From: Mobula hypostoma
Taxonomy: Eukaryota
Direction: 5' to 3'
Assembly: GCF_963921235.1 (NCBI RefSeq)
Contig: NC_086106.1
Coordinates: forward strand, 25,668,001 to 25,732,000
Length of the DNA stretch: 64,000 nucleotides
Made by a program: the position numbers and the translations under genes. The stretch's first letter is position 1. Each line of letters opens with the position of its first letter. This document shows positions 5,131 to 58,254 of the stretch, in pieces. Below the pieces are notes generated by a model, which saw only the letters and a program-made list of their open reading frames with translations, was not told where the DNA came from and did no database searches.

Positions 5131-5678
5131 CGGCACAGGTTGTGTAACTTAGGGAAATCATCCTATATTTCAGTGACATCCCCTTCGGTATACATAGTAA
5201 GTGCGAAGAAAACCCATTTCCCTCCGTTCTCTGATTTTCTTTATTGAATCAATGTCAACAGATTCTACTTGAGCATTCGCCTTGATCTGCAGCATTTACT
5301 GTACCATCCCATTCAATGTTTTGTATCTCCAAGTTCGTCGATACGCTCACTATTGCTCCCTCAAGAATAGCTGATAAACTTGTAAGAGACAACGTTGAAC
5401 AAAGTTGACAGCCGTGGTATGGCATTCCAATCCAAAGAGGGTATTTAGATACCGGAGATATACGAAAAATGCATTCTAATGCTTTCATTTGAGTTGAATG
5501 CAGGAACTGTTCTCAAGCTTGACCGCTTTTGCGACTGAGTCGACTACGTAATCTTACCGATGTATGTGCCCGCCCCTTGCAGTTGACTAGCAAAACACGC
5601 CCTCCACTGATATTTCTTGCATCACACAGAACTGTTTTAATTTTTTCTTCGCACCCGAGGCCTCCCTGCCAGATCATG

Positions 5679-6059
5679 TTTTCCCATAGCCCAGAGGAAC
5701 GTAAGGGTACAACAAAGAGCTCAAAGTTATTCAAGTGAGCAGTTTTACTGCCTGTCAGCGAAGCGGCGGTAAATCTAACTGGGAATTTTGGAGGGCGCCT
5801 CAAAATTTTCCTGGGTTATATATCTTCACAATTTTTTTTAGAGCTTTTGAAAAATAGCGCTAGAGCTTTGTTCGGTCCTTCAGATAAAAAAGGTAATTGA
5901 AGAGCACCCTACATCACTGTTTTTTTTTCACTCAACAAGGGGTAGAATATTGAAAGATCCCTGGCTTGAAAAATCTCACTAAAAATCAGTTGGACGCCAT
6001 TTCCCAGAGACTCACCAGGCAAACAGCCAATAATGCAATAAAGAACAGAAGGATAGCGT
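5679..6059 (-). pseudogene. Decayed TCR V pseudogene
   Basis: Leader (ACG for ATG) with GTGAGT donor at 6010-6015; PKFPVRFTAASLTGSKTAHLNNFE...FLWAMG; RSS-like CATGATC/23/AGAAAAAAT at 5640-5678. Confidence 0.68.
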
Positions 6060-6872
6060 ATGGTGCCGTACTTCTGACTCTGTCGAAAGGCAGTCTAGAT
6101 CTAAGTAATTACTATTAATTGACAGATATGGTAAAATGAATTAACATCAGCGGCACACTTATTTTTTAAGACAGCAGGCCTTATCGTACTGATGATATAC
6201 CTGATCAAGTTGTCTACAGACGCCATATTTTTTTTTATTGCTCGTACACTTTACCATGTATTATCTTATTGTTTTACCTTGTACTATATCGACAAACCGG
6301 ACAATCGATTGATCTGTATCAATAGGAATTAAAGCAATCTTTTTACTGTTCAGCAGCAGATGTGACAATGATAAACGAATTGCACTTCTAATTGGTGAGT
6401 GAATGTCCCATACAGGTAAATAGATTCCACATGGGTCTTCGCTATGATCATAAACGTATCGAATGTCACCTCATCCAATTTTGTCTAAGGATATAAGATC
6501 TCTGTATCTACAGATTTCCCCACCCCCACTCCACCATCCTCACTGTAATACCTCAAGGATGAAGCATGAATCTGTCATTGACGATTTCGAAGAACGTTAG
6601 CTACCTTGATATGGCATTCCAGGCTAAAGAGTTTTGGAAGATGGATATCCCTGAAACTAATTGAAAAATAAGTAATTTTATTACGCGTTGTATTCCATAA
6701 TTGGAGCGTCTTTTGCTAGTGCGATTCGCTCAAATAATTCGAGCACACGACACAACCGACTTTGGAGTGCGGTCCTTCCAATTTCACAGCAAAGCAAGTG
6801 CTCTAGTGAGAACTCATTGCATCATCGACGACAGAGTTTTGTGCAGACCCGTTGTCTACCTGCTACAGCCTG

Positions 6873-7267
6873 GTCCCTGTGGCACAGGGAAACACGGTGA
6901 CCTCTGAAACAAAAGCCCGAGAGATATTCAAAATGGGCCACCGTACTACCTTTCTGCAAAACAGCCGTAACCCACAACGGTCCTTCTGGAGAAGTGTCCA
7001 GCTTGCCTGAGCTGTATTGCTCAAGTAAGAATTTTTTCAGATAGCGCTCGATGCTGGCTGCAGCAATAGCTTGGGTGTAATTACGGTTCCTTCTTCCCTC
7101 GGTCGTTAATTCGGGAGGGTCCGGCATCACTGATTTTTTTCCTTATTTCCTTGGAATTAAAGACGGAATGTTTGAACATTCTTGGCCCCTATTGACACAC
7201 GGAACAGTAGCTGTCCGACTGTTACCAGGTAACAAGGTCGAAACATAATGGAGCAAAAATAATGCAT
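6873..7267 (-). pseudogene. Decayed TCR V pseudogene
   Basis: KKSVMPDPPELT...YSSGKLDTSPEGPLWVTAVLQKGSTVAHFE..ISRAFVSEVTVFPCATG; degenerate RSS CAGGCTG/23/ACAAAACTC at 6834-6872; leader-like exon near 7226-7267. Confidence 0.7.
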
Positions 7268-8110
7268 GACTTTGGGCTTCTGGCTCGATCGAAAGGCAGA
7301 TTAGTTCTTAACAATTACAATCAATTCATATTTACAAGAGGGAGAGATGATGATCAACGGCACTCTTGACTTTGTTTATGTTCGGGCAAATTGCCCTACT
7401 GTAAGGTTCGCTGGGGAAAAGAGGGCCCAACCTTTCTGAGCACCAATCAGAATCTATTTTATCTTTCAGTTTTTAACACATTGTGTTTTCGTTCTCTAAA
7501 AAAAAACACTTGTAAGAGAATGGTGGAAACTGCACTTGACTTTCGAGTCACGTGCTTTCAAGCGGTTGCATGTTCCCCTTCGGGAAGCAATGGGGTTGCC
7601 GGTTGGGTGGAGAACATCAAGTCTTTGCTGATGCAGTCTGCCAGATGTGTAGAGAAGTAGGCCAAAGCACAGAAACAGGTTGCAATGATGTGTCTTCAGT
7701 TGCATGATGGATAGCATAGCATAGCGGTTAGTTGGGATGCTGTTAAATATCGGAACTTCGGAGTTCAGAGTTCAATTTCACCGTTTGCAAGGTGTCTTAA
7801 CGTACATCGGATGTAATGATTGCCTTTTCTAGCACTTCGGTTTCTTGCCACTGAACATGTCATAGTCCCTTCTGGCAATCCCCCACCTTGCCATTTATCC
7901 CAGCAATTGGGCCGCAATCACCTCAATTTACAATCATTCCCAGGTTCCACTAACTACACACGTTAGCTTCCCATCAGAAACTGCAGGATAAAGACCCTGT
8001 GATCACCACAAGGTGCTGCCAGTTCGTTGGTCGACTCGTGTATGAGTAACCTCGTTCCATGGTTCTGAGGACTATCAGTTCTAAGTTGAGCATCGTTCCT
8101 GAATTCTCTA

Positions 8111-11100
8111 TTTTACGTGCCCCGTAACTGGGTTGCCAAACCAGCAGAAATGGATCACTCAGTTGGAGTCTGGATTACCAGAACTAAGAAAGTTTTATTA
8201 AAGAAACAAGCAACACAGTAATCGAAAGGATAATAAATGCAACAGTTCAGCAATGATAAACACACATGTGCACAGAATTAAGATAACAGCATCAATCAAG
8301 CTCTATCGTTGTCTCGGGATAAATGACCAATTTCAAAGTGACACAAAGTTCAGGCCAATTTAGTAGTTCAGTTCGCAGTAATCGTTGCCATGGCGATGGA
8401 CAACGTGGGGGGTGGAGAGAGAGAGAGAACGGGAACGACTGATCATTCAGAAACGGCTTCCACTCACAGACCGGCGATAATTGCTCACAAGCAGCTTCCG
8501 GGCAGGTCCTTGGTGATGTCACCTGAGGTCACCGACCGTGACCCCTCCTCCAGATGCGGTCGATCCTCTGCAGTGAACCCGGCACCCAAGCAAAGGCGGA
8601 CACACACCGGGTTCCCGCTGATGGTACCTTTCCACCCTGGCCGTTGTCTAATACTTCCCACCGACTCGTGAGAGGCGCACCGCTTCCAGGGTCTCGTTAC
8701 CTCGTGTGTCGTGTCTCCTGCCTCAGCGAACCTGTCCCTTTTTATCCCCCTGCTGGGGCATCGCCTGTCCGCCACTTCAAACAGTTCAGGATTCAAAGGG
8801 GGAGCCGCTCCAGACAGCTCTCTCTCCCGTCGCTTCATTACACATCTCCAGATGCTGTTTCATTGTGTTCCTTATCTCTCTCTTGAAGACAGGTGGCAGA
8901 CCAACTGCGGATCACACAGGACAGCTAACATCTTATCTATGTGTATTATCGTCACACTTCCCCCCTTTAAGGACTTTTACCGGGAGGTAAAAATTACAAA
9001 CATGAATACATTATTTGATACACGGACAAATATACATCTTTATCAGCCATTTGGCTAACACAGCGAGTTTGAAGTTGTCAACACCTTGACAGGCAGTCAT
9101 CGCATTTTCTGTTCCTTTTACATGTGTTATTAATAATCCCTTAGACCAGGCTCCAACTCAGCAAACTTCATAGTGGCCAAATACACTGATAAATTTCGAT
9201 CAATTTAACCTCCCATTTGGTTTTGTCCCGGACTACAATAACAAGGGTCGTCCCATTCCGACTCAATTTTCTCTCGCAAGGGCTTAGTAGGAGGGGGAGG
9301 GGTAGTGACCGCAGAGTTATTGCAAAACTTCCTACAGTACCCCACCTTGTCTAACAGCCTTCTGAGGGCTCCCTTGTCTGTCGGGGTTGGGTGGTCAGCG
9401 ATAGCCTGCACTGCAGCTTGCATCGCTGCCAGCTGCCCCTGTGTCACCACAATACCCAGGTAAGTGACCCTCGTGTGGCCGAATTCATTTTCCTCAAGGT
9501 TCACTATCAAGCTGGCTTCAGACAGCCGTATTAAATTGCCAATACACACCTCTGTGTTCATCAGCCCTTTAGCACTGAATTATTCATTATATATGGCTGT
9601 TGTTTGCTAGGCTGACCTATTGTAACCGACATCACCCAACGTCCCAGGTCTTTGCATCGCCTCGGGACAATCAAGCACAGGGGTGCGAGTCGTTTAATTA
9701 CTTCTGCTAAAGATTCGCTTTGTTCGGGGATTAAGGGAGAGACCTTATCAGTAGACCTGGCCAAAACAATAGCCTTCTCCCATCTGATCGATCCCATACT
9801 AATCTTTTCAAAATGTTTTTTTCCTCTTATCAGGGGGCCCCTAGCTTATTTGATTTCCACGCTAACCCCGACTGGGTATGTTAACATATCAAAAGCCGGT
9901 GACCGTCTCAGTTCGCGTCGGTCATGATCAATAACATTCTTCCCCCTGGGCAGCCGGTAAATCTCTTTCATGATTCCACCATTTGTTTCCTCCAGCACCG
10001 CAAAATGTCCACCGGGGGGTTCCTCGTGGGTCATGTTAAAAACCTCATCCCCATAACTCTTTTGCACCACCCCCCACTCCTCATCTACGGGTACTGTACT
10101 TGATTTCCCTTTTTTCCTTAACACTTCCTCCTCCACACAATAGCCTACTAGTTCCCTTCTTAAAGCTGTGTCAGAGAGAGCTGTCTCTGCCGAAAGCATC
10201 AGCCCCTCGTCTCGCTCCTGCGTCTGCACAAATTATTTTCTGGCTACTTCTACGTCTGTCCCAGCTCCCTCACTGCCTCTGGTCTCACTACACTCTTTCT
10301 TTTCATTTTCTACCCTCTTCTCGTACAAGGTTGGCAGAAACATTTCAGCTAAATTCACTACCGCGGTCCCGTGATGAATGTGTGAGTCCATGGGCGGGGC
10401 CTCAATGCTGGCAGCCTGACCTGTCAATCTCACGACTGGGAACACGATTCCCCCGGCGATGTCATTACCGAGCAAGACTTCCACACCTTTCATCGGTAAT
10501 TCGGACCTCACCCCGATCGTGACTAGTCCAGAGATCAGGTTGCTTTGTAAGTGTATCTGGTGCAAAGGGACTGACTCTGTCCCTTCCCCAACACCTTTGA
10601 CCTCTACCTCCCCAGTCTGGGTCTCTGAGCTAAACTCTAATACACTCTTCAGTATTAGTGACTGATACGCTCCCGTGTCTCTCCAGATCTGCACTGGAAC
10701 TGGTTTTAACCCCTCCTTCACTGACACCAATCCGGCCGAGATAAACCTCTCGCGCCCTTCCTGAACTTTTTCAGACCTGTCCTTCCCTAGCGGTTCGCTT
10801 AACAGCTCGATACAGCCATTCAAAGTCGCTGTTTTTCCTTTTCCCGTCTCCTTCTTTGGGGCAAAGCACCTGGACGCAAAGTGTCCGGCTTTCCCACAAT
10901 TATAACAGACGACCCCAGGAGACTTCCTACCAGACTGCTCCCGGTCTACCTTATCCTTTTCACTAGTCCCCGGCTTACTTTCTGACTTTTCCGGCGGACT
11001 CTCCCCGCCGTCCTGACTACCCTTCTGGTAGCTTTTACTCGGGGCAAACTTCATTTTATGCGTCAACGCATACTCATCTGCTAACTTTGCAGTTGCGGCT

Positions 11101-12997
11101 AACGTGGCTGCCTCTTTCTCATCGAGGTAGGGTCTCATACAGTCAGGGACACTACCATTAAACTGCTCAATCAGGATCAGTTGTAGCAGTCTGTCATAAA
11201 CCCCCTCTACCCCCTTCGAGGCGCACCAACGCTCACAATATGTCTGCATCTCACGGGCAAACTCCAAATACGTGCGGTCCCACTGCTTCCGCGCATTCCG
11301 GAACCTCTGCCGGTATGCCTCCGGGACCAACTCATAAATCCTGAGGATGGCCTCTTTTACCACCTCATACCTCTGGGCATCTTCCGCGGACAGAACGGAG
11401 TAAGCTTCTTGGGCTTTCCCTTTCAGTACACTCTGAAGTAAGACAACCCACTTATCCCTCGGCAAGTCCTGACTTATAGCCACTTTTTCGAAGTGGAGAA
11501 AGTACCGATCCACGTCGATATCGTCAAATGGGGGAACCAGCCTAACCTCCTGGGTCGCCCGGAACCCTCCACCTTGGTTCGGCACGAGCCCCTGCTCGGC
11601 CCTTATCTTTAACTTCTCCAGCTCAAATTTCCTTTCTCTCTCCCATTGCCTCTCTATCTCCTCTCTCTCCAACTACTCTCTCTCTCTTTCTCTTCTCTGT
11701 CCAACTCTCTCTCTCTCTCTTGCCTTTCTAACTGTCTCTCCTTCTCCCGCCTTTCTAACTGCTTCTCTTCGTGTTCTAACTGCTGTGCCCGGAACTCGTG
11801 CTCGAATCTCAGTTTTTCAAGCTGTACCTGTACCGCGTCTCCAGCAGGTTTTTCAATAGACACCACCTCCAGCTCGCCTTGGGGAAACACACCCTTAGAT
11901 ACATAGTGCTCTACGATAGCCCTGTGTATCTCTTCTCTCCTCATTGTCGACTTCACCTTAGCAAGATTCAACCGTTTGGCCACAGCTACTAATTCCGATT
12001 CACTGGCATCCTCTAATGCCTCCAAGGTCGGCGCCTTTATAAATTCCTCAGCCTCCATTTCTGCTGTTTGTCTTTTCTTTCTTTCGGGAATTTTAACCAA
12101 ATCAATTTACTCCGTCCCAAATTTAGCGTTCAAAATCGCGGACGAGAACCCCACGTATGTTACGTACCCCGTAACTGGGTTGCCAAACCAGCAGAAATGG
12201 ATCACTCAGTTGGAGTCTGGATTACTAGAACTAAGAAAGTTTTACTAAAGAAACAAGCAACACACTAATGGAAAGGATAATAAATGCAACAGTTCAGCAA
12301 TGATAAACACACATGTGCACAGAATTAAGATAACAGCATCAATCAAGCTCTATCGTTGTCTAGGGATAAATGACCAATTTCAAAGTGACACAAAGTTCAG
12401 TCCAATTTAGTAGTTCAGTTCGCAGTAATCTTTGCCATGGCGATGGACAACGTGGGTGGAGAGAGAGAGAACGGGAACGACTGATCATTCAGTAACGACT
12501 TCCACTCACAGACCGGCGATAATTGCTCACAAGCAGCTTTCGGGCAGGTCCTTGGTGATGTCACCTGAGGACACCGACTGTGACCCCTCCTCCAGATGCG
12601 GTCGATCCTCTGCAGTGAACCCGGCACCGAAGCAAGGGCGGACACACACCGGGTTCCCGCTAATCGTACCTTTCCACCCTGTGCGTTTCCAGTACTGGCC
12701 ACCGACTCGTGAGAGGCGCACCGCTTCCAGGGTCACGTTACCTCGGGTGTCGTGTCTCCAGCCTTAGCGAACCTGTCGCTTTTTATCCCCCTGCTGGGGC
12801 ATCGCCTGTCCGCCACTTCAAACAGTTCAGGGTTCAAAGGGGGAGCCACTCCAGACAGCGCTCTCTCCCGTCCCTTCATTACACATCTCCAGATGCTGTT
12901 TCATTGTGTTCCTTATCTCTCTCTTGAAGACAGGTGGCAGACCAACTGCTGATCACACGGGACAGCTAACATCGTATCTATGTGTATTCTCGTCACA
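8111..12997 (-). mobile_element. Ty3/Gypsy Gmr1-like LTR retrotransposon, pol largely deleted; LTRs 12158-12997 and 8111-8956
   Basis: ~840-bp direct repeats; 4-bp TSD TCTA on both sides; tRNA-Pro-like PBS (TGGGGTTCTCGTCC) below 12158; polypurine tract AAAGGGGGAAG next to 8957; gag-pro ORF and RT/RNaseH remnants. Confidence 0.92.
10233..11672 (-). CDS. gag: Gag-protease ORF of the Gmr1-like element (479 aa; SCAN-like capsid region, CCHC knuckle, protease); N-terminal part in ORF 11654-12100
   Basis: YFLHFEKVA...LKGKAQEAYS...YELVPEAYRQRFR capsid/SCAN-like region; CYNCGKAGHFASRC zinc knuckle; WRDTGAYQSLI protease motif. Confidence 0.85.
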   Translation of the reverse strand: MEREEIERQWERERKFELEKLKIRAEQGLVPNQGGGFRATQEVRLVPPFDDIDVDRYFLHFEKVAISQDLPRDKWVVLLQSVLKGKAQEAYSVLSAEDAQRYEVVKEAILRIYELVPEAYRQRFRNARKQWDRTYLEFAREMQTYCERWCASKGVEGVYDRLLQLILIEQFNGSVPDCMRPYLDEKEAATLAATAKLADEYALTHKMKFAPSKSYQKGSQDGGESPPEKSESKPGTSEKDKVDREQSGRKSPGVVCYNCGKAGHFASRCFAPKKETGKGKTATLNGCIELLSEPLGKDRSEKVQEGRERFISAGLVSVKEGLKPVPVQIWRDTGAYQSLILKSVLEFSSETQTGEVEVKGVGEGTESVPLHQIHLQSNLISGLVTIGVRSELPMKGVEVLLGNDIAGGIVFPVVRLTGQAASIEAPPMDSHIHHGTAVVNLAEMFLPTLYEKRVENEKKECSETRGSEGAGTDVEVARK

Positions 12998-16566: not shown

Positions 16567-16760
16567 CCAAAAACAGTTTTTAAGTCTTGAGAACATTGTG
16601 CCACTGAGTATTTCACGTTGATGTCGAGTATGTGACAGTCAGTGATTGTTGGGTACCTCGCCCTTCCAGTTTTGCAGCAAATGGCAGACTCTGATGAGCG
16701 CCGAAAACATCCGTCCCATATGCTCTTTGTCCAGGCCAACTGTCTCACTGCACCACTGTG

Positions 16761-17205
16761 GGCTGCATCGCACAAAGAGGAACCCCACAGTCAGACACAA
16801 AAGCTCCAGAGATATTCAAATGAGCTGTCTTGTTGCCTTGCCACAAATCAGCGACAAAACCGACCGAACATTCTGGAGGCTAGTACAGATCTCCTGAGCT
16901 ATATAATTTTAAACAAGTATTTTGGATCTTCCACACTATGCTGAAAGTATCAGAAAATTGTAAACAACAGGAATTCTGCAGATGCTGGAAATTCAAGCAA
17001 CACACATCAAAGTTGCTGGTGAACGCAGCAGGCCAAGCAGCATCTATAGGAAGAGGCGCAGTCGACGTTTCAGGCCGAGACCTTCGTCAGAAAATTGTAA
17101 AGTCGCTGTTAGAAGTACAGTTCAGTGTTATGGCTAATGCTTCGAGCATTAATTCAGAAGGGTCGTTTCTTTAAGAGAAAAACATGCGTAATCATCCCTG
17201 TCTTA
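16761..17205 (-). pseudogene. TCR V pseudogene interrupted by a short Penelope-like insertion
   Basis: DPSELMLEALAITLNCTSNSDFTIF*YFQHSVEDPKYL...GNKTAHLNISGAFVSDCGVPLCAMQ; perfect heptamer CACAGTG/23/ACAAAGAGC at 16722-16760. Confidence 0.82.
16965..17087 (-). mobile_element. Short Penelope-like terminal fragment with 14-bp TSD
   Basis: cagaaaattgtaaa duplicated at 16951-16964 and 17088-17101; sequence matches the end of the PLE at ~63190-63280. Confidence 0.75.
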
Positions 17206-20770: not shown

Positions 20771-20836
20771 ATCTTTTTTTTTCTATTTCCTGTTGCGCGC
20801 CCTCCTGATTGGCCGCAAAAAGGCGCCCTCCAGTGA

Positions 20837-21210
20837 AGTCGAAAAGTTGAAGTGCCGAAAGTTCTTTTTTTCACTCTTTCCCACTCACAATAACTTATTG
20901 CCTGTTCTCCATCTTCCTCTGTTGCTCCCCTCCCACTTTCTTTCTTTCAAGGCCTTCTGTCCCATGATAGTCCCCCTTCTCCAACCTTGTATATTTTTGC
21001 CATTCAATTTCCCAGCTCTTGGCTTCATTCCTCCACCTCCTGTCTTCTCCTATCATTCCAGGTCTCCCCCTCCCAATTTCAAATCTGTTACTATCTCTTT
21101 TTTGTCCGATAGTCCTGACCAAAGGTCTCGAACCGAGACGTTGACTGTACTTCTTCCAATGGATGCTCCCTGGCCTACTGAGTTCCACCAGCAATTTGTG
21201 TGTTGGTCTC
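20837..21210 (+). mobile_element. Penelope-like 3' fragment inserted between the A1 RSS and its CTCF-like motif
   Basis: Matches 62880-63280; agtga repeated at both edges. Confidence 0.65.
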
Positions 21211-21239
21211 AAGTGAGAGCATTTGTATCACACATGGCC

Positions 21240-21278
21240 AGTTTTTGTCAGGACCCGCCGTCTCCATACAACAATGTG
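21240..21278 (-). other. 23-RSS of V A1
   Basis: CACATTG, 23-nt spacer TTGTATGGAGACGGCGGGTCCTG, ACAAAAACT. Confidence 0.9.
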
Positions 21279-21708
21279 GTATCATTAGACAGAGATACAT
21301 GCCAGAGTCCGACACAAGAGCCTGAAGGATATCCAGTTGTGCCGTCTTGCTGCTTTTCTGCAAACTACCGGTAAATCTCAAAAGGCAATCTGGAGCCGCT
21401 GTATTCCACCTGTGCTATATACCTTCAGCAGTTAATCCGGAGGCTCTCCACTATGTTGATTGTACCAAATGATATCAGCACCAGCATAGGTGTATTTGCA
21501 CTTCAGTGTTATGGTCTGTCTTTCCTCTGCTGTTATGTCGGGAAGATCCTGCGTCACTGAATCTTTCCCACTCGTTCCTGCAAAAGAAGGACAGAATACG
21601 TCAACATCGTGGTTTGTATTCAACGCAGGGGAAATTCTCCATCCACTTTTGCAGAGACTCACTGGGCAGCACAGCCAATGCAATCAGCAATGAACAGAGG
21701 GAAATCAT
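21279..21708 (-). pseudogene. TCR V pseudogene, family A (A1): leader 21663-21708, V exon 21279-21577
   Basis: Leader MISLCSLLIALAVLP, then KDSVTQDLPDITAEERQTITLKCKYTYAGADIIWYNQHSGEPPD*. In-frame TAA plus a later -1 frameshift; ends YLCLMI at an intact RSS. Confidence 0.9.
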
Positions 21709-22790: not shown

Positions 22791-23740
22791 AGCACATGGT
22801 GTCTGCGTTCACGCGCGAACTAGACAGATGACATCCAAGAAGCTAATACAACCGCTTTGCGAGAATGATGTAAGATACGCCACACTCATCACTTTCCTTA
22901 AAACGCACATAAATTGCTCTGCTAAATGGGCGTTAAACCGGGGAAGTCAGAGCCCAGACTTTTGAGCACCGATCTGAATTGAAATACTACACTCTCTGCT
23001 TAGTTGTCATGCACTCTAATTATATTGTATTTGACAATATCACCCCTCTCTTCTTCATTCTACTTTAATTAACACTTCATTTATAGCAAAGCATCTCCAT
23101 CTTTGTTCCCTCTTTCGTTACTTTCCTATATTTCCGTCGTTGTATCTGTCAATTACACTCTGACTGTCTTTGTATTCCAGTTTGCAATTATTGTAAATCA
23201 TCAATGCAGCTTTAAAGTCGTTGTGGGAACGTTCATTAATCCAATGCCAGCTCACTCGGTTTTAATTTTCCATTCGAAAAATAAATATCGATTTATATCC
23301 ACTTTTAGGAAGTTAATGCCAATAGACTTCACCTGAAATTTATCTTCTTCAGAGCATTTAGTGATACACCTTTTTTGTCCGATGCTGTTTAGACAGAGAG
23401 AACCTCAGTATCTCCAATTTGCACTAATCTTCACCATTGAGGGGTGATGAAAAATGAAGTCCAGCAAAATCTTAACCAGAAGGTAATGTTGTCGGCAACA
23501 GAGAGGCATGGACATCGAGATATGGTGGAAATTTATCGGAAAGCTGCCACAGTATCCCGAGATAAGTTAAATTCAAGAAGTGTTCCACAAGTCTGGGAGC
23601 ATTTTGCTGCTGAATGCAACGTTTCAGTCGACCACGTGATCCTCATGCTTTGTGATACTGCTGTACCAGTTTTCCAGCAAAAGGCGCTCTCTAGTGATCA
23701 CGCATCGCTGGATTTTGTCCAGACCCGCTGTTCCCTGCAA

Positions 23741-28690: not shown

Positions 28691-29979
28691 GAAAACAAGT
28701 AAATGAATATCCAAATATCGCGAAAATGTAATGTACAGTTCCCATTCGGGTACGTCTTCAAACGAAGAAGTGATGTTCAGTCTTGAAAACATATTGTCAC
28801 TGAGTGTTTCACTCTTATATCTAGTAGTTGTGTAACACCGGGGGTGTTTCCCTGGTTAAAGGATTCGTTGACACAAAGAACGGAGACTTTCTGAGCTCAA
28901 TCAGAATACGCTTTGTTTCCATTCGTCATTCTGTCCGTTTTTCCGTTTTTTCAAGGTCCCGCGTCCCGTTCCCCCAATCTCTCTCTCACTCTCTCTTCCT
29001 TAGTGTGCCCTTCTGCTTCCGCCACGTGTTCTCTGCAAACTCACAGCATATTCACATAGTTCTCGATGTGTAACCTAAAACAATTCAGACTCGATCTAAT
29101 GCCAGATTACATCCAAAAAGTTAATACCACAGATTTGCGAGAATGATGTGAGATACGCTTCACCGTTCACTTCTTGTAAACCTGCTTAAATTTCTCTGCT
29201 AATTGAAAGTGGAACCGGGCAATTATGAGCAGAGCCTATTTAGCCACCGATCTGAATGAAAACGCTACGTCTCCGTTTATTAATCATTCTCTCTAATATT
29301 ATTCGATTTGTCTTTCTCAGCCGTCCCTTCTTCGTTCTACTTCAATTGACCGTTCCTTTCTAGCAAAGCATCTTCTTCTTGTTCTCTCTTTCGTTACTCT
29401 GCGATTATTCTTCGCGGTGTCTCTCAATCGTTCTGTGTCTGCCTCTCTGTTTCAATCTGCAATTTTTCTAATTCTTCAATTTCACTAGTTGTCGGAACAT
29501 CTTTTATTCCATTGCCAGTCCACTCGGTATTCATTTTCAATCCTAAAAATAAACATCCATTTAACTCCACTTTTTAGGAATGTAATGCCAATGGACTCCG
29601 CCTAAAACGTTTCTTAATCAGAAGCATATAGCGTGATAGCTAATTCGATGCTATCTAATCATATACATCCTCATTCATCTTCATTGTTAATTCCCCGGAG
29701 TGATGAAATTGATATCCAGCAAAAAAAAAATAACCACACGATATTGTTATAAGCATGAGAGAGAGACATGGACACCGAGATATACTTGACATGAATATAC
29801 CTGGGGAAAGCTGAATTCAAGACGTGTTCCACAAGATCGGGGGCATTTTGCTGCTGAATGCAGCGTTTTATGTCGACCACGTGATCCTCATGCATTGCGC
29901 GTAGAGCTCTTCCAGGTTACCAGCAACAGTCGCCCTCTACTGATCACACAAGACTGAATTTTGTCCTCACTGCAATAAT

Positions 29980-31420: not shown

Positions 31421-32521
31421 TAAAATCTGCCCTACTCTTCCTTGGAGCTAGCCACAAATGTATGAGGGGCGCCAGAATGCAGTGAACCTACAGGAGATGC
31501 TCCGACCGATTATACAGATTCAGTACATGCTCTGACCGATTGTATAAAAGTAATGGATACAAGAAATTTAGTACGTGGATGTAGTGGGAATATGGTACAT
31601 TGAATAAAGTAAACAGAGGATGATTTGAAGATGTTCCTCCGATAAAAGTATTTCAAGTGAGGACAAGCAACACCTTCTGGGAGACTCGGCGCTTTCGTTT
31701 CGAAGCACATGTGGCTATTATTTCTTAGTACATTATAGCAACCATAAGAATAGACTGGAGTTAATTGACTCCCCCTACCACCACCACCATCCACACCTCG
31801 CTCTCGATCTCGCCCACTCTCTTCGCCCTCATTCCCTTCGCTGTCGTTTTCTCTCCCTTTTTGTCTTTCTCCCTCAGTCTGGTCTCTCTGTCTCTGTCTC
31901 AATCCATCGCTTTTGCCTTCGCCTCCCTCCGTCATCCTCCTATTCGTCACCTGCTGTTTCTCACTGTCACTGTGAGAGTTAAAGGAGGAGTTAAATTACT
32001 GTTACACTCGATATCTGTATTCTCTATCACGCTAAACATTCGCAGGTTCTGTCGCGTTATCTAAATCCTCAGTATAAACAATAAGTAGCTGTTGCAACCA
32101 CCTTAATATGAGTGCCAAGCTACTTGCAATTCTGTGTCATTCAGAAGACCCCTGATTTCTGCACTTTGTGTGTTCCTTTTTCAGGCATTATCCAGTTTAA
32201 ATATATCCCGCTAATACTCCATGCTCATTATGTCTCACTGCTGACACTCGAATCAAGTGGCCAAAGGCAATGTCAAGTAAGGTTGTCAACATTGGTATGC
32301 CGTTGCAGCAAAACGAACATGCGAGAAAGCACACTGCGGTATCCGGAAAAATGCGTTTTGAAATTCCAGTTTAAAAGCGCATTGTAGTCAAGACCTGTTC
32401 CATTAGATTCGACTACTTGCATTGCTGATTGTAGCGCGCTTAAGTAGGACAGATTAGCATGGCTGCTTTCCAGGTGCCACCTTCCAGTTTCTCGGAAAGA
32501 AAGCGCCCTCCTGTGAGAGAT

Positions 32522-36306: not shown

Positions 36307-37453
36307 TAATTAAAATGAGAGTCTCAAAAAGTCGAAATATACCTTTGGAAACAGATGCTATCAGTTTGTGCTCCTTTGACAGTAACCGGACGTTCTCTCA
36401 CTTTGTTTCTTCCATCGGTGGGAAGACACAAAGGTCTAAAAGCACGTTCTAATCTGCAAGACAATAGATTATACCCTTCTGTAAGAGTATCGAACTGTAG
36501 CTTGAAATTGAATCTTAATTCCATCTACCTCGGTATGACCTTGTTCTTTATCTCCGGCTTGAGCTGCATCTTGTACGTCTGTCACTTTATTTTTTGCTTA
36601 CTATTTGTGTTTTACTTTGTACTACCTCGATAAGCAGTGCATTGAATTTATCTGTAAAAACCGAATCAATGCAGTCATGCCACAATAATAAACAAATTCC
36701 GTTCCGAATTTCGATATGTCGCAAATGAAAGACGTGGGGATAACATGGGATCTGTTAAATCCGGTTGGCAAACCATATTATACAAGATATCACTCATTTG
36801 TGATCCCATTCCCTCTCTCCCCCTCTGGCTCTTTTTTATACTAAAAATGCCGTCATTATGAATCTCGATTTAGTATGCAGTCCCATACAACGATATTAAT
36901 CATAAATATACTTTAAACATTGAAGCTACTACTCACAGATCTGGAATGCAACGACCAAAGTAAAATCTGCATTCTCTATCACGTTAAACATCGACAGGTT
37001 CAGTCGTATTATCTAAATACTCAGCATAAATCATAAGTATCTGTTGCAATATCTTGAGTTTCAGTAGCATGCCACTTGCGATTCCTTTTCAATTCGAAAA
37101 CCAGCAATTTCCCCATCCTCTGGGATTTTTTAGTCAGCCATTATGCAATTTAAACATATACAGTTTTAACGCCGTGTAAATTATTTCTCCTTGCAGACAC
37201 AAGAACAGAGTGGCCAAAGACAACGTCAGTCAAGGCTGGCAATCATGAGCTGCCTTTCCCATAAAAGAATGTCTGTGAATACACATTGCGTTTTCCCGGA
37301 AATGCAATGTAAATTTCCAGTTTGGGCACGCCTTGTAATTAGCAACGTTTCCTTTAGCTTCGGCACCTTCTGCTGCTGATGGCAACGCCCTTAATTAGAG
37401 CACGTGGCTATAGTTGATTTCTGGGTACGCCCCTTTCAGATTCTCTGCAAAAA

Positions 37454-37468
37454 GGCGCCCTCCAGTGA
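37454..37468 (-). promoter_or_regulatory. Candidate CTCF-binding element 23 bp beyond the A2 RSS nonamer
   Basis: Minus strand TCACTGGAGGGCGCC vs CTCF core CCAC[C/T]AG[A/G]GGGCGC. Confidence 0.6.
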
Positions 37469-37491: not shown

Positions 37492-37530
37492 AGTTTTTGT
37501 CAGAACCCGCCGTCCCCATACAACAGTGTG
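37492..37530 (-). other. 23-RSS of V A2
   Basis: Minus strand: heptamer CACACTG, 23-nt spacer TTGTATGGGGACGGCGGGTTCTG, nonamer ACAAAAACT. Confidence 0.92.
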
Positions 37531-37963
37531 GTACTCATTGCACAGAAATACATGCCAGTGTCCGACACAAGAGCTTCAGTGATATTTAATTGAGCCATCT
37601 TGCTGCCTTTATGCAAAGCAGCGTTTAATTTCACTGGGCAATCTGGATGACGATCCATTCCTCCTGTGCTATATAATTTCAGCAAGTACTTTGGAGGTCC
37701 GCCACTATGTTGAATGTACCAAAAGATATTTGCGTCAGCGTAAGTGTAATTACAGTTCAGTGTTATGGTCTGTCCTTCCTTAGCCGTTAGGTCGGAAGGA
37801 TCCTGCGTCACTGAATCTTTCCCACTCGTTCCTGCAAAAAAAAGACACATTACGTCAACATTGCTAGCGTGCATTCAACGCGAGGGAAATTCACTGACCT
37901 ACTTCTGAGTGACTCACCAGGCAGCACAGCCAATGTAATCAGTAATGAACAGAGGGAAATCAT
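37531..37963 (-). CDS. TCR alpha/delta-type V gene segment (family A, copy A2), apparently functional: leader exon 37918-37963, intron 37832-37917, V exon 37531-37831
   Basis: 46-nt leader MISLCSLLITLAVLP(G) with GTGAGT donor and CAG acceptor. Open V exon GTSGKDSVTQDPSDLTAKEGQTITLNCNYTYADANIFWYIQHSGGPPKYLLKLYSTGGMDRHPDCPVKLNAALHKGSKMAQLNITEALVSDTGMYFCAMS with canonical Cys, Trp (WYxQ) and YxC, followed directly by a 23-RSS. Alpha/delta assignment is inferred from motif style and the absence of interspersed D/J. Confidence 0.88.
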
Positions 37964-39895: not shown

Positions 39896-39910
39896 AGCGC
39901 CCTCTAGTGA
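39896..39910 (-). promoter_or_regulatory. Candidate CTCF-binding element next to the B3 RSS
   Basis: Minus strand TCACTAGAGGGCGCT. Confidence 0.62.
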
Positions 39911-45720: not shown

Positions 45721-46728
45721 CGCCAGGCAGCAAAGATAATATAATTGGTAAGGATCAAGGACGTACACAATGCCTGCTTTCACGCGCGGTCTTAAGCCTG
45801 CTAACAAGAAGTTAATACCACAGATTTGCGACAACGATGTCAGATACGCTACACCCTTCGCTTCGTGCAAAACCTGCATAATTTGCTCTGCTAACTCAGA
45901 GTTGAACCGTGGAAATCAGAGCTGAGCCTATTTAACCACGGAGGTGAATGGAACTACTACACTCTGTTTATTTATCATACACTCTAACTATATTCTATTT
46001 TCCAATCTCACCCTTCCCTTCATCGTTCTATTTTAAGTAACTCTTTATTTCTTGCAATGCACCTCCTACTTTGTTTTCCATTTTGTTGCTGTCCAGTATT
46101 TCCTTCGCTATGTCACTCAATGGCTCTCTGTCTGCCTCTGTATTCCAATCTGCAATTTTAGTGATTCATCAATGTAGTTTTAAACTCGTTGTAGGAACAT
46201 CCTTTGTTCCAACGCCACTGCATTCGTATTAATTTTCAATCCGTAAAATAAACATCCTTTCCTCTGCACTTTCAGGAAGCTAATGTCAGTGGACCCCACC
46301 TGAAATGTATCTTCATCAGAAGCTTTGAGTGTGGCAGCATGTCCAATGCTGTCTAGTCATTTACAAACTCAATATATTTAGGTTGCACTCATCTTCACCG
46401 TTAACCCCTCAATATCGTGAAAACTGAAGTCCAGCAAAAAAAAAGAAGTAACCATAAGATATTCTTATAGGCAACAGAGAGACATGGACGCCACCATACA
46501 GTAGAAATACTTCGGAAAGCCGCCAGAATATACCCAGGTTAAGCTAAATTCAAGATGTTTCCACAAGTTTGGACGCATTGTGCTGCTAAAAACAGCATTT
46601 CAAATCGACCACCGTGATGCTCATATTTTCTGCGTACAGCTGTTTCCTGTTCCCCAGAAAAAGGCGCACTCTATTGATCACGTAACGCTGGATTTTGTGC
46701 AGACCCGCTGCTTCCCTGCAACACCGAG

Positions 46729-49219: not shown

Positions 49220-49234
49220 GGCGCCCTCCTGTGA
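49220..49234 (-). promoter_or_regulatory. Candidate CTCF-binding element 24 bp beyond the A4 RSS nonamer
   Basis: Minus strand TCACAGGAGGGCGCC. Confidence 0.55.
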
Positions 49235-49297: not shown

Positions 49298-49717
49298 GTA
49301 CTCATTGCACAGAGATACCTGCCAGAGTCCGACACCAGAGCTTCACTAATGTTCAATTGAGCCGTCTTGCTGTCTTTCCGAAAAGTAGCGGTAAACCGAT
49401 TCATTCGATTCATTACTTTAGTGCTAGATACCATCAGCAAATAATTTGGATGTTCTCCACTATGTTGAATGTACCAAAAGATATCTGGATCATAGTAAGT
49501 GTAATTACAGTTCAGTGTGATGTTCTGTACTTCCTTGGCCGTTAAGTCGGGAGGATCCTGCGTCACTGAATCTTTCCCACTCGCTCCTGCAATAAAGGAC
49601 AGAATACATCAACAACGCCGGCTTGTATTGAACGCCGGGGAAATTCGCTGGCCACATTCACAGACACTCACCGGGTAGCACAGACAATGCAATCATTAAT
49701 AAACAGGGGGAAATCAT
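49298..49717 (-). CDS. TCR alpha/delta-type V gene segment (family A, copy A4), open frame, potentially functional: leader 49672-49717, V exon 49298-49586
   Basis: Leader MISPCLLMIALSVLP(G) with GTGAGT/CAG splice sites. V exon GASGKDSVTQDPPDLTAKEVQNITLNCNYTYYDPDIFWYIQHSGEHPNYLLMVSSTKVMNRMNRFTATFRKDSKTAQLNISEALVSDSGRYLCAMS is 12 nt shorter than A2, in frame. Confidence 0.85.
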
Positions 49718-53945: not shown

Positions 53946-55301
53946 AGCAGAGACAGTATAATCAGTAAGCATCAAGGTCTGCTTTCACGCGCGAAATTAA
54001 GCCAGATAACAAAAAGTTAATACCACAGATTTAAGAAATGATCTGAGATACGGTACGCCCTTCACTTCGTGCAAAAACCTGTGTAATTTGCTCTGCTAAC
54101 TCGGAGTTCAACCGTGAAACTCAGAGCTAAGTTGATTTAACCACCGACGTGAATGGAACTACTACATTCTCTGTTTATTTATCATTTACTCTAACTATAT
54201 TCTATTTTCCAATCTCACCCTTACCTTCATTGTTCCATTTTATTTAACACTTCATTTCTTGCAATGCACCTCCTTCTTTGTTTTCCATTGTGTTATGTCC
54301 AATATTTCCTTCGCTATGTCAATCAATGGCTCTCTGTCTGCCTCTGTATTGCAATCTGCAATTTTAGTGAATCATCAATGTAGCGTTAAGCACGTTGTGG
54401 GAACATCCTTTAATCCAACGCCAGTGCACTACGTATTAATTTTCAATCCGTAAAATAATCATCTTTTTATCTGCACTTTTAGGAAGCTAATGTCAGTGGA
54501 ACCCATCTGAAATTTATCTTCAACAGAAGCATTTAGTGTGACAGCATGTCCAATGCTGTCTAGTCATATACAACCTCGGTATCTCTAGGTTGCACTCATC
54601 TTCACCGTTAACTCCTCAATATCGTGAAAAATGAAGTGCAGCAAAAAATTAACCACAAGATATTCTTATAGGCAACAGAGAGACATGGACACCACCATAT
54701 AGTAGAAATTCTTCTGAAACGCGCCAAAATATCACCAGGTAAAGCTAAATTCAAGATGTGTTCATCAAGTTTGGTCGCATTGTTCCCGCAATAAAGGACA
54801 GATAATCTGTCGGATTATCTAAATGCTCACTATAAATCATGAATACCTGATGTATCTTCCGTAATTTCAGTGGGTTGTTAATTTCTGGGTTTCGTTAGCA
54901 TGCCACTTTCAATTCTTTGTCATTCTGGAAAACACCCGTTTTGCCACCCTCTGTTTTCCGTTGACCACTTTAAATTTATCCCGGTGCCACTCCGTCCGTA
55001 TTATCTTTCTGTGCAAACAAACTAACGAAGTGGCCAAAGACAATGTCAGTCAAGGCTGTTCATCGTTTTATATACTTATAACAAAAGAAGATTGGCGAAT
55101 GCACATTGCTTTTTTTAGGAAATGAATTGCAAATTTCCAGTTCGGTTGCGCCTTGTAATCAGAAACTTTCCTCAGCTTCGGCGCCTTGTGCTGCTGCTTA
55201 CAGCGCTCTTCCGCAGGACACGTGACCACAGATGATTTCCGGGTGCACCCCTTCCAGATTCGCCGCGAACAGGCGCCCTCCTGTGAGAGTTTTGCTGTCT
55301 T

Positions 55302-55656
55302 CCGTCTTGCTGACCTTCTGAAAACTAGCGGTAAACCGATTCATTCGATTCATTACTGCAGCGCTAGATACCTTCAGCAAATACTTTGGAGGTTCTCCAC
55401 TATGTTGAATGTACCAAATATATTTGGATTATTGAAAGTGTAATTGCAGTTCATTGTTATGTTCTGTCCTTCACTGGCTGTGAAGTCGGGAGGATCCTGC
55501 GTCACTGAATCTTTCCCACTCGCTCCTGCAATAAAGTACAGAATACATTAACAACGTCGGCTTCAGTTGAACGGCGGGTAAATTCGCTGGCCACGTTCAC
55601 AGACACTCACCGGGTAGCACAGACAATGCAATCATCAATAAACAGAGGGAAATCAC
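55302..55656 (-). pseudogene. TCR V pseudogene, family A (A5), 3' end and RSS deleted
   Basis: GTG start, frameshift at the Trp codon, SAAVMNRMNRFTASFQKVSKT, then ~100 bp deletion relative to A4 removing YxC and the RSS. Confidence 0.85.
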
Positions 55657-55858: not shown

Positions 55859-56080
55859 NNNNNNNNNNNNNNNNNNNNNNNNNNNNNNNNNNNNNNNNNN
55901 NNNNNNNNNNNNNNNNNNNNNNNNNNNNNNNNNNNNNNNNNNNNNNNNNNNNNNNNNNNNNNNNNNNNNNNNNNNNNNNNNNNNNNNNNNNNNNNNNNNN
56001 NNNNNNNNNNNNNNNNNNNNNNNNNNNNNNNNNNNNNNNNNNNNNNNNNNNNNNNNNNNNNNNNNNNNNNNNNNNNNNNN
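55859..56080. other. Assembly gap (222 N)
   Basis: Run of N. Confidence 1.
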
Positions 56081-56574: not shown

Positions 56575-56825
56575 AGTCACCCCTCGTCTTTCTTCTTTGC
56601 AGAAAGATCCTTGCTGGCAGAAATTGAAATGACCGGTGGAATATACAGGCACTTGCCGATGTGTAACTGAAGTTGAGCATTCCGATTCCCCTTTCTTTAA
56701 TTGTCGATGCAGAGAGCCAGATCTTTCCCACACGCTTCTACAGAAGAAGGACAAAATAACTGAACGTCAAGTGCTCCCAATGCACCTGCGAGAGACCCAC
56801 TGACTATTTGCGAAAAGATTCGCCA
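56575..56825 (-). pseudogene. Family D V relic, copy 5
   Basis: Paralogous to the other D relics. Confidence 0.5.
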
Positions 56826-56919
56826 GGCAGCGTAGACAGTATAATCAGTAAGGGTCAAGGACGCACGTGGTGTCTGCTTTCACTGCTATCTCTCTATCCA
56901 GCACGATCCCTGACCCTCC

Positions 56920-57570
56920 GAATTGTAGTTGTTGCCTCCTCTGTTTCTTACCATGATGTTATTCCATCCGTCATATTCGTTCTCTGGCTGCCTCTGCTCC
57001 TTTTCCCTTCGCGTTTTCCAGCTGTAAATAAATGTTGTAATGTCTATCTTCGCATGATGTGTCTAAAGAATTGTGATTGCTCTTTTCTGATTTTTTCGTT
57101 AAGTAATGTACATTTTGTTTTCGTTCCTGTAGAAATTCCTCGTTGGTTATTCTGTCCGTATATGATATGCACAGCATTCTTCTGAGGAACCACATCTCTG
57201 CTGCATTGATTCGTTTTTCGATTGCATTTGTGATGGTCCGTGACTCGCAGCCATACATCAATATAGGAAGAATGTAGCAGCTGAGAGTTCTAAGACGGAC
57301 GTCAATTGTTATTTTCTTGTTCGTTAGTATTTTTCTCATTTCTGTAAATGCTGTTCTTGTCATTGCTATTTTTATTTTTATGTCTGTTTCTCATTTGCCA
57401 TCAGATGTTACCCATGATCGAAGGCACTTGACATTGTGAATTTGGTTCAGGGTTTTATTTCCCAACACGATCCTATAGTTTGGTAAAACAGGTTTCTTTG
57501 ATATTACAATTACCCTAGTTTTCTTTTTGTTTAAGGTTAGTCCAAGTTTTTCGTTCTCTGTATTGATGGT
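56920..57570 (-). mobile_element. RTE-clade LINE 3' fragment
   Basis: RTAFTEMRKILTNKKITIDVRLRTLSCYILPILMYGCES...AAEMWFLRRML, an RTE RT C-terminus. Confidence 0.8.
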
Positions 57571-58239
57571 AGATCATTCACTCTAACTGTATTCTATTGG
57601 TCAATTTTACCCTTCCATTCTTCGTTCTACTTTAAATAACAGTTCATTTATTGCAATGATTCTCCTTCTTTGCTCCCTATTTTGTTACTGTCCTATATTT
57701 CCGTCGCTATGTTACTCAATGGCTCTCTGTCTGCCACTGTATTCCAATCTGCAATTTTAGTAAATCATCAATGTGGCTTTAAACTCGTTGTTGGAGCATC
57801 CTTTAATCCAACGCCAGTCCACTCAGTATTAATTTGCATCTATATATCTGAACTTTCTGGTACCTGATGTCAATAGACCCCACCTGACATTTTTCTTCAT
57901 CAGAAGAATTTACTGTGACAGCATGTCCAATGCTATCTAGTGATATACAACCTCAGTATCTTTCGCTTGCACTCAACGTTACTGTTAATCCCAAAAGGTA
58001 GTGAAAAATGTAGTCCAGCAAAAAAATAACCACAAGATTTTCTTATAGGCAACAGAGCGACATGGACACCACCATATAGTAGAAATGCTTTGGAAAGCCA
58101 CCATAATTTCACTCGGTAAATCTAAATTCAAGAAGTGTTCCACAAGTTTGGTCGAATTTTGTTGTTGAATGCGGCATTTCAAATCGACCACGTGATCTTC
58201 ATGCTTTCTGCGTACAGCTGTTCCAGTTCCGCAGCAAAA

Positions 58240-58254
58240 GGCGCCCTCTAGTGA
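58240..58254 (-). promoter_or_regulatory. Candidate CTCF-binding element 12 bp beyond the B5 RSS nonamer
   Basis: Minus strand TCACTAGAGGGCGCC, a near-consensus CTCF core. Confidence 0.65.

What the first reader, a model, noticed from the sequence alone, without database searches (positions are those of the whole stretch)
5596..58254. Co-oriented CTCF-like motif just beyond the RSS of nearly every V segment
Seen: a 15-mer, minus-strand TCACT[A/G]GAGGGCGCC, at 5596, 20822, 23683, 29929, 32502, 37454, 39896, 46663, 49220, 55272 and 58240. It lies 12-29 bp beyond the nonamer where the RSS region is undisrupted, in both family A and family B, and always points the same way as the V genes. Known: this closely resembles the CTCF core (CCACYAGRGGGCGC), and proximal mouse Igh VH genes use RSS-proximal CTCF-binding elements to be captured during cohesin loop extrusion. 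Inference: a cartilaginous-fish TCR V array may use the same RSS-adjacent CBE architecture, which would point to an early jawed-vertebrate origin of loop-extrusion-guided V selection. I am not aware of this being described for chondrichthyan TCR loci.
Basis: partly seen in the sequence, partly recalled or inferred. Interest (0 to 1): 0.85.

Follow-up and report, generated by a model that had tools for sequence, protein, structure and literature searches.

The report
CTCF-type site beside ray TCR V genes
A short DNA motif that looks like a binding site for the genome-looping protein CTCF sits just past the recombination signal of almost every T-cell-receptor V gene in this devil-ray array. It is kept far better than the DNA around it and recurs at the same spot in a skate, so it is probably a real looping element like those beside mouse antibody V genes, though nobody has shown binding.

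Summary
Eleven co-oriented copies of a TCACTRGAGGGCGCC-like 15-mer lie on the V-gene strand. Three are exact and eight have 1-3 mismatches. Where the RSS survives they start 12-28 bp past the 23-RSS nonamer.

The motif is not a duplication passenger. It is the best-conserved 15-column window between V families A and B (0.79 identity against a flank mean of 0.36). Its CpG is kept in 11/11 copies.

The same motif, position and orientation occur at 3/3 little-skate V genes and in one unidentified elasmobranch-like contig. There the substitutions fall on the degenerate positions of the CTCF core.

Family B, skate and that contig score p about 1e-6 to 2e-5 with a recalled MA0139.1 matrix. Family A, the only family with intact V genes, is weak (p about 1e-4).

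I found no such site at 7 bamboo-shark, 1 shark-like, 12 frog or 10 bony-fish-like V genes. An origin in early jawed vertebrates is therefore not supported; batoid conservation is.

Nine of the 11 sites flank pseudogenes or orphaned stumps, unlike mouse Igh. No occupancy data exist.

The scan noted this motif before in the same locus, 871 kb before and 128 kb beyond this window.

The parts
37454..37468 (-). Motif copy, family A (TCACTGGAGGGCGCC), 23 bp past the nonamer of an intact V
   Evidence: PWM 9.2, p 5.6e-5
37492..37530 (-). 23-RSS of intact V A37454 (CACACTG / 23 / ACAAAAACT)
37533..37832 (-). Intact TCR alpha/delta-type V exon (family A); leader exon further upstream
   Evidence: Pfam V-set; best PDB matches are TCR alpha chains
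49220..49234 (-). Motif copy, family A (TCACAGGAGGGCGCC), 24 bp past the nonamer of an intact V
   Evidence: PWM 7.6, p 1.1e-4
49300..49587 (-). Intact family-A V exon; leader and splice sites intact
58240..58254 (-). Motif copy, family B (TCACTAGAGGGCGCC), 12 bp past the nonamer remnant of a pseudogene V (58340-58579)
   Evidence: PWM 17.4, p 6.8e-7
39896..39910 (-). Motif copy, family B, beside pseudogene V 39965-40260 (Trp41 codon is a stop)
   Evidence: PWM 17.4, p 7e-7
29929..29943 (-). Motif copy, family B, beside pseudogene V 29988-30280
   Evidence: PWM 13.9
46663..46677 (-). Motif copy, family B (2 mismatches), beside a V exon split by an insertion of about 1.7 kb (5' part at 48614-48694)
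   Evidence: PWM 6.5
23683..23697 (-). Motif copy, family B. Its V (27233-27523) is separated from it by a CR1-type LINE (about 23710-27245)
   Evidence: PWM 11.0
20822..20836 (-). Motif copy, family A, now 375 bp from its RSS. An insertion (20837-21211) landed inside the ancestral motif, and its 5-bp target duplication TCACT (21212-21216 and 20832-20836) left a complete core on the far side
21283..21578 (-). Family-A pseudogene V (internal stop) with good 23-RSS at 21240-21278
32502..32516 (-). Orphan family-A motif copy. Homology to other A units starts 24 bp upstream, and no V exon is left
55272..55286 (-). Family-A motif copy beside a truncated V (55306-55526). A deletion of about 125 bp removed the end of FR3 and the RSS
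5596..5610 (-). Most degenerate copy (TCAGTGGAGGGCGTG), beside a V fragment at 5711-5803
   Evidence: PWM 2.4
16660..16760 (-). Canonical 23-RSS (16722-16760) of pseudogene V 16766-17008. At the homologous spot the motif has decayed (ATCAGAGTCTGCC)
37355..37410 (-). Example of the further conserved islands downstream of the motif: a CACGTG E-box at about +45 to +55 and TCAGCAGCA at about +85. The second island is also seen in one skate flank

Best explanation
The 15-mer is the core of a conserved CTCF-binding element (CBE). It is built into the 3' flank of each V unit of the devil-ray TCR alpha/delta V array, 12-28 bp beyond the 23-RSS nonamer. Its CCA...GCGC direction is the same as V transcription.

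Inferred mechanism:
1. CTCF binds with its N-terminal side facing downstream, the side on which the D/J/C recombination centre should lie.
2. It stalls cohesin that is reeling V-region chromatin past the recombination centre.
3. This holds the adjacent RSS near RAG and anchors loops that contract a very large locus.

This is how the RSS-associated CBEs of mouse proximal VH genes work.

The ancestral form was probably TCACTAGAGGGCGCC, which is identical in ray family B and in a skate V closest to ray family A. The ray family-A form (A to G at a key position) is a derived, predicted weaker version.

Shown here: sequence, position, orientation, constraint, and conservation between ray and skate. 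Inferred: CTCF occupancy, cohesin stalling, and any effect on V usage.
For: Sequence and placement
- Eleven copies, all on the V strand, against 0 to 1.45 expected by chance.
- The position relative to the nonamer is fixed within each family.

Match to the CTCF matrix
- With the CTCF matrix, family-B sites score 17.4, 17.4, 13.9 and 11.0 (p 7e-7 to 2.4e-5). They account for 3 of the 4 hits scoring 13 or more in the 64 kb.
- A frequency matrix built from the 14 V-linked sites correlates with the CTCF matrix column by column (mean r 0.60; 0 of 20000 column permutations reach it). The information content per position also correlates (rho 0.66).
- Against dinucleotide shuffles of the same 70-bp flanks, the strong sites are reached by 0-2 of 300 shuffles.

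Constraint
- The motif is the most conserved 15-column window in the A-versus-B flank alignment (0.79 against mean 0.36 and maximum 0.66) and within family A (0.88 against maximum 0.72).
- Its CpG is kept in 11/11 copies. No other CpG is kept in more than 5/11. The window's CpG observed/expected ratio is 0.66.
- The core survives intact beside pseudogenes, beside a deleted RSS, and after an insertion into it.

Other species
- Little skate (for identity) has it at 3/3 V genes, 24-31 bp past the nonamer, forward, scoring 16.9-17.4.
- An unidentified elasmobranch-like contig has TCAGCAGATGGCGCC 25 bp past the nonamer, scoring 18.3. It differs from the ray form only at the S, Y and K positions of the CTCF consensus.

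Literature
- Mouse proximal VH genes have CBEs just 3' of the RSS, and these drive their use (PMC10293834, PMC7930373, PMC5859386 Table 2).
- Skate TAD boundaries show the MA0139.1 motif with an orientation code (PMC10115646).
- The vertebrate CTCF motif is conserved back to lamprey (PMC5504073).
Against: - There are no binding, accessibility or contact data.
- The matrix was recalled from memory. Its consensus does agree with published strings.
- Family-A sites, beside the only two intact V genes, are weak (scores 7.5-9.2, p about 1e-4, one 2.4). They carry G where 93% of CTCF sites have A. All ray sites have T at the first C of CCA.
- Nine of the 11 sites flank pseudogenes or orphaned stumps. 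In mouse Igh, by contrast, pseudogenes lack the CBE (PMC7930373).
- Other islands downstream are also conserved (CACGTG, TCAGCAGCA), so the element may be larger than a CTCF site.
- The motif is absent at 7 bamboo-shark V genes and 1 shark-like V.
- The direction to the J/C region cannot be seen in this window.
Confidence: 0.6

Rival explanations
1. The motif is a neutral passenger. It was present in the 3' flank of an ancestral V unit and copied along with every V duplication, and it has no function of its own.
For: - The whole flank is paralogous over more than 250 bp.
- The array is a roughly 17-kb four-V cassette repeated about three times.
- Within family B the motif (0.86 identity) is matched or beaten by 13 of 333 other windows.
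- Most of the linked V genes are dead.
Against: - Paralogues are only 72-79% identical, yet the motif is the single best-kept window between families and within family A.
- Its CpG is the only one kept in all copies.
- It recurs at the same spot in skate and in a further contig whose flanks are largely not alignable.
- One pseudogene (V 16766) shows what decay looks like at this spot.
Confidence: 0.07
2. The motif is a conserved regulatory module for factors other than CTCF. It would be a V-downstream enhancer or promoter of about 100 bp for germline or antisense transcription, or for RSS accessibility. The G-rich 15-mer would be bound by another zinc-finger protein, working together with the nearby E-box and GGAA-type sites.
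For: - Further conserved islands lie downstream: CACGTG in 6/11 copies and TCAGCAGCA in 9-10/11 copies. The second island is shared with one skate flank.
- GGAA-containing stretches lie 13-30 bp after the core in ray, skate and the unidentified contig.
- The family-A core departs from CTCF at two strongly preferred positions, yet it is nearly invariant within the family.
Against: - Only the 15-mer is conserved in every lineage. The E-box is not found in skate.
- Changes between lineages stay within the CTCF-allowed alternatives.
- Partial resemblances to YY1, ZIC and E2F sites, judged from memory of their consensus sequences, do not hold across the copies.
Confidence: 0.2
3. The sites bind CTCF but serve general architecture or insulation. 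They would separate V units, block the spread of chromatin states, or form constitutive loop anchors, rather than presenting the V RSS to RAG.
For: - The sites are retained beside pseudogenes and orphaned stumps.
- The strongest sites belong to the dead family B.
- In mouse Tcra/Tcrd, most V-region CTCF sites lie upstream of promoters, not at the RSS, yet 129/144 point to J-C (PMC5859386).
- Frog and bony-fish-like V arrays have co-oriented strong motifs between V genes and none at the RSS.
Against: - A fixed placement 12-31 bp from the nonamer in three lineages is hard to explain if only spacing along the array mattered.
- In the one system tested, mouse Igh, exactly this placement controls V use (PMC10293834).
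Confidence: 0.13

Closest known systems
RSS-associated CTCF-binding elements of mouse Igh proximal VH genes (e.g. VH5-2/VH81X)
   Same: - A CTCF core lies just 3' of the V 23-RSS (within 100 bp).
- It has the same direction as the V gene, pointing towards the recombination centre.
- It is repeated at many V genes of an array (PMC10293834, PMC7930373, PMC5859386 Table 2).
   Different: - This is a TCR alpha/delta-type V array in a ray, not an antibody heavy-chain locus in a mammal.
- The sites are kept beside pseudogenes, whereas mouse pseudogenes lack them.
- The cores beside the intact V genes are the weakest.
- Occupancy and function are untested.
CTCF sites of the mouse Tcra/Tcrd V region
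   Same: The locus type is the same. There are many CTCF sites across the V array, and the great majority (129/144) point towards J-C (PMC5859386).
   Different: Mouse sites lie mostly upstream of V promoters or between genes, not next to the RSS. The frog and bony-fish-like loci fetched here look like the mouse in this respect. The ray and skate do not.
Vertebrate two-part CTCF site (15-bp core plus upstream motif bound by zinc fingers 9-11)
   Same: The core matches. A TGCA-containing stretch lies 11-12 bp upstream of the core in ray family A, one skate V and the unidentified contig. This is roughly where the upstream motif sits, with a short linker (PMC12885311, PMC5504073).
   Different: The upstream match is short, and its spacing implies a linker of about 3 bp rather than the usual 5 bp. 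Family B lacks about 11 bp there. I could not score it with a matrix.

Membership tests
RSS-associated CTCF-binding element (mouse Igh proximal VH type) | Sequence matches the CTCF core matrix at a usual threshold | tested here: inconclusive
   The matrix is MA0139.1 recalled from memory. Met for family B (17.4, 17.4, 13.9, 11.0; one copy 6.5), skate (16.9-17.4) and the unidentified contig (18.3). Borderline for family A (7.5-9.2, p about 1e-4; one copy 2.4).
RSS-associated CTCF-binding element (mouse Igh proximal VH type) | Lies within about 100 bp 3' of the V RSS | tested here: met
   12 bp in family B and 23-28 bp in family A where the RSS remains. Three copies have been displaced by an insertion or deletion. 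Skate 24-31 bp, unidentified contig 25 bp.
RSS-associated CTCF-binding element (mouse Igh proximal VH type) | Motif direction is the same as the V gene, pointing to the D/J/C recombination centre | tested here: inconclusive
   Co-orientation with V is 11/11 in the ray and also holds in skate and the contig. The position of J/C is outside the window. An earlier unchecked note places a TCR-delta D-J block 5.2 Mb towards lower coordinates, which would fit.
RSS-associated CTCF-binding element (mouse Igh proximal VH type) | Found at recombining V genes and lacking at pseudogenes | tested here: not met
   Only 2 of the 11 sites flank intact V genes. All family-B V genes are pseudogenes: the Trp41 stop was verified in two and inferred from translations in two more.
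RSS-associated CTCF-binding element (mouse Igh proximal VH type) | Bound by CTCF and cohesin in developing lymphocytes | not testable with these tools
   No ChIP, ATAC or Hi-C data are available here.
RSS-associated CTCF-binding element (mouse Igh proximal VH type) | Removing the site lowers contact with the recombination centre and use of that V | not testable with these tools
   Needs experiment or repertoire data.
Functional (selected) non-coding element | Evolves more slowly than the neighbouring flank among paralogues and between species | tested here: met
Two-part CTCF site (core plus upstream motif) | Upstream motif 2-7 bp 5' of the core | tested here: inconclusive
   A TGCA-containing stretch lies at -12/-11 in three lineages. 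The match is short, was not scored with a matrix, and is absent or shifted in family B.

The most novel reading that the evidence does not exclude
RSS-adjacent, J-ward-pointing CTCF sites are an old, selected feature of elasmobranch (at least batoid) TCR alpha/delta V arrays. They guide cohesin-driven RAG scanning across a multi-megabase locus. Either the 'V-RSS plus CBE' unit predates the split of the lineages and was lost or moved to promoters in bony vertebrates, or it arose independently twice: in batoid TCR and in mammalian Igh.
Probability: 0.3. Interest if true: 0.8.

Novelty: new member of a known kind. Interest (0 to 1): 0.58.

Why it matters
So far, loop extrusion has been tied to the choice of V gene by an RSS-adjacent CTCF site essentially only in mouse Igh. 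The same unit in TCR V arrays of rays and skates, kept for a time on the order of the ray-skate split, would show that this wiring is not a mammalian antibody-locus peculiarity. The little skate already has Hi-C and ATAC resources, so it would be a tractable non-mammalian system in which to test it. My library searches found no paper describing this for cartilaginous-fish antigen-receptor loci. The value is limited because everything here is sequence inference, and my small shark sample lacks the site.

Tried and rejected
- A word-index protein search with the ray V found nothing. With the skate and contig proteins it found nothing useful.
- Most top hits of the exhaustive protein search were bony-vertebrate multi-V gene models.
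- One hit, P0027 (assembly GCA_036365525.1, species not established here), had no DNA available. Two other look-ups were not on record.
- A metagenome scan with a 20-mer shared by skate and the contig gave one chance microbial hit.
- The organism of the Logan runs SRR17051962 and SRR17051963 could not be identified.
- A literature search for the IUPAC consensus string found nothing, so the matrix rests on my memory.
- Readings considered and rejected:
  - YY1 fits only the unidentified contig's ATGGCG.
  - E2F, Sp1/KLF and REST do not match.
  - A reverse-strand CTCF reading of the GGCGCC-TTTT flank scores only 9-10 and breaks the invariant G.
  - A transposable-element origin of the flank is unlikely, because the flank is V-linked in every copy and partly shared with skate.
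Full report
**What is there**

The window holds a minus-strand array of about 13 V remnants. Their products hit Pfam V-set, and their best solved relatives are TCR alpha chains. Earlier notes of this scan name the genome as the lesser devil ray; I did not test that.

Two V families alternate in a roughly 17-kb four-V cassette (B-A-A-B) that is repeated about three times.

Only two V genes look functional: family A at 37533-37832 and at 49300-49587. Both have an intact leader, intact splice sites and a good 23-RSS.

The family-B V genes are pseudogenes. Where family A reads TTTTGGTAC, two B copies read TTTTGATAC, a stop at the conserved Trp. Two more B copies give the matching shifted translation.

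The rest of the window is retroelement sequence.

**The observation**

The 15-mer occurs at all eleven stated places, always on the V strand. Three copies are exact and eight have 1-3 mismatches. Chance predicts 0 exact matches and 1.45 loose ones. The one extra loose match (18524) is in a LINE fragment.

The motif starts 12 bp after the nonamer in family B, 23-24 bp after it in family A, and about 28 bp after it at 5596.

Three family-A copies have lost their RSS neighbour:
- At 20822, a 375-bp insertion landed inside the ancestral motif. Its 5-bp target duplication (TCACT) left a whole core on the far side.
- At 32502, the V is gone.
- At 55272, a deletion of about 125 bp took the end of FR3 and the RSS.

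Two V remnants lack the motif. One (41143-41434) is truncated before the RSS. The other (16766-17008) has a canonical RSS but a decayed copy of the motif at the homologous spot.

The two assembly gaps lie more than 330 bp upstream of the nearest V exon and touch no motif or RSS. The second gap is flanked by sequence collinear with a paralogue.

**Is it more than a duplication passenger?**

Paralogous units are only 72-79% identical. In a gapped alignment of the eleven flanks (30 bp before the motif to 260 bp after it), I compared the motif with every other 15-column window.

| Comparison | Motif identity | Other windows |
|---|---|---|
| Family A versus family B | 0.79 | mean 0.36, maximum 0.66 |
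| Within family A | 0.88 | maximum 0.72 |
| Within family B | 0.86 | 13 of 333 windows equal or beat it |

The motif is therefore the best-kept window between families and within A. Within the less diverged family B it is good but not exceptional.

The motif's CpG is kept in 11/11 copies. No other CpG in the alignment is kept in more than 5/11. The window is CpG-depleted, with an observed/expected ratio of 0.66.

Two further islands are also conserved between families: CACGTG about 45-55 bp downstream and TCAGCAGCA about 85 bp downstream.

**Is it CTCF-like?**

I scored sites with the JASPAR MA0139.1 count matrix as I recall it. This is a caveat: the matrix did not come from a tool. Its consensus does agree with published strings.

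| Sites | Score | p |
|---|---|---|
| Family B, five copies | 17.4, 17.4, 13.9, 11.0, 6.5 | 7e-7 to 1.8e-4 |
| Family A, five copies | 7.5-9.2 | about 1e-4 |
| Family A, copy at 5596 | 2.4 | 7.9e-4 |

Three of the four hits scoring 13 or more in the 64 kb are these RSS-adjacent sites.

All ray copies have T at the first C of CCA. Family A also has G where 93% of CTCF sites have A.

A frequency matrix built from the 14 V-linked sites of three lineages correlates with the CTCF matrix column by column (mean r 0.60; 0 of 20000 column permutations reach it).

Against dinucleotide shuffles of the same 70-bp flanks, the strong sites are reached by 0-2 of 300 shuffles and the family-A sites by 2-10 of 300.

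**Other species**

The exhaustive protein search and contig look-ups gave the loci below. "Past nonamer" is the distance from the nonamer to the core.

| Source | V genes with the site | Details |
|---|---|---|
| Little skate (assembly identified through) | 3 of 3 | Forward site 24-31 bp past the nonamer, scores 16.9-17.4. One core is identical to ray family B, although its V is closest to ray family A (59% identity) |
| Unidentified elasmobranch-like contig (two Logan runs) | 1 of 1 | TCAGCAGATGGCGCC 25 bp past the nonamer, score 18.3. Differs from the ray form only at the S, Y and K positions of the consensus |
| Bamboo shark | 0 of 7 | Only two of the seven are close relatives of the ray V genes |
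| Shark-like metagenome contig | 0 of 1 | |
| Spadefoot toad (identified through) | 0 of 12 | |
| Two bony-fish-like loci | 0 of 10 | |

The toad and fish-like loci do carry strong co-oriented CTCF motifs between or upstream of V genes. That is the arrangement described for mouse Tcra/Tcrd (PMC5859386).

The skate result suggests that the ancestral form was TCACTAGAGGGCGCC and that the ray family-A form is derived.

In short, the RSS-adjacent placement is shared by ray and skate but not by the sharks and bony vertebrates I could sample. An earlier follow-up of this scan says sharks carry the site. I could not reproduce that, unless the unidentified contig is from a shark.

**Comparison with what is known**

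- In mouse Igh, dozens of proximal VH genes have a CBE just 3' of the RSS. Deleting the VH5-2 CBE lowers its use about 50-fold. VH-region CBEs are convergent to the downstream anchors. Pseudogenes in that region lack the CBE (PMC10293834, PMC7930373, PMC5859386).
- In mouse TCR alpha/delta, CTCF sites lie mainly upstream of V promoters, and 129/144 point to J-C (PMC5859386).
- Skate TAD boundaries show the MA0139.1 motif with an orientation code (PMC10115646).
- The two-part CTCF motif is conserved back to lamprey (PMC5504073).
- A TGCA-containing stretch lies 11-12 bp upstream of the core in ray family A, one skate V and the contig. It could be the upstream motif with a short linker (PMC12885311), but the evidence is thin.

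My library searches found no description of such sites in cartilaginous-fish antigen-receptor loci.

**Verdict**

The element is under constraint and is most likely a CTCF site built into the V unit, working like the mouse VH RSS-CBE.

Three points weaken the simple story:
- The intact V genes carry the weakest cores.
- Most sites flank dead V genes.
- The direction to J/C, and CTCF occupancy, are unknown here.

The claim of an origin in early jawed vertebrates is not supported by my sampling. Conservation within batoids is supported.

The scan noted this motif before in the same locus, 871 kb before and 128 kb beyond this window.

Noticed in passing
window 20837-21211: A 375-bp non-autonomous insertion sits inside the ancestral motif of V 21283-21578. 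It is flanked by a 5-bp direct repeat, TCACT, so the far side still reads as a complete core.
   Followed up: partly
window 23710-27245: A CR1-type LINE (endonuclease and reverse-transcriptase ORFs) separates family-B V 27233-27523 from its motif at 23683.
   Followed up: partly
window about 20800-58600: The V units form a four-V cassette (B-A-A-B) of about 17 kb, repeated about three times. Motif-to-motif distances of 16.2-18.3 kb recur.
   Followed up: partly
window 40153, 30174 and the other family-B V exons: Family-B V genes share a stop at the conserved Trp41 codon (TGG to TGA). This suggests a pseudogene that was already dead when the cassette was duplicated.
   Followed up: partly
window, about 45-55 bp and about 85 bp downstream of each motif (e.g. 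37355-37410): Two further islands are conserved between V families: CACGTG (6/11 exact) and TCAGCAGCA (9-10/11). The second is also present in one skate flank (L001, near 2230) and at 37361-37379 scores as a weak second CTCF-like site (10.8).
   Followed up: partly
window 16722-17008: A third type of V pseudogene has a canonical RSS (CACAGTG / 23 / ACAAAGAGC), but its motif has decayed at the homologous position.
   Followed up: partly
window 10233-11672 and 13956-14504: Retroelement gag-like ORFs in a G+C-rich stretch. One has a SCAN domain plus a zinc knuckle; the other has retrotransposon gag plus a zinc knuckle.
   Followed up: no
L009 8808 and 11122; L008 12790, 14028; L002 several: In the bony-fish-like and toad V arrays, strong CTCF motifs (scores 12-18) lie between or a few hundred bp upstream of V exons. 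They are on the same strand as the V genes, with none at the RSS.
   Followed up: partly
window 32517-32545: A (GAT)n microsatellite abuts the orphan motif at 32502, at the point where homology to the other family-A units begins.
   Followed up: no
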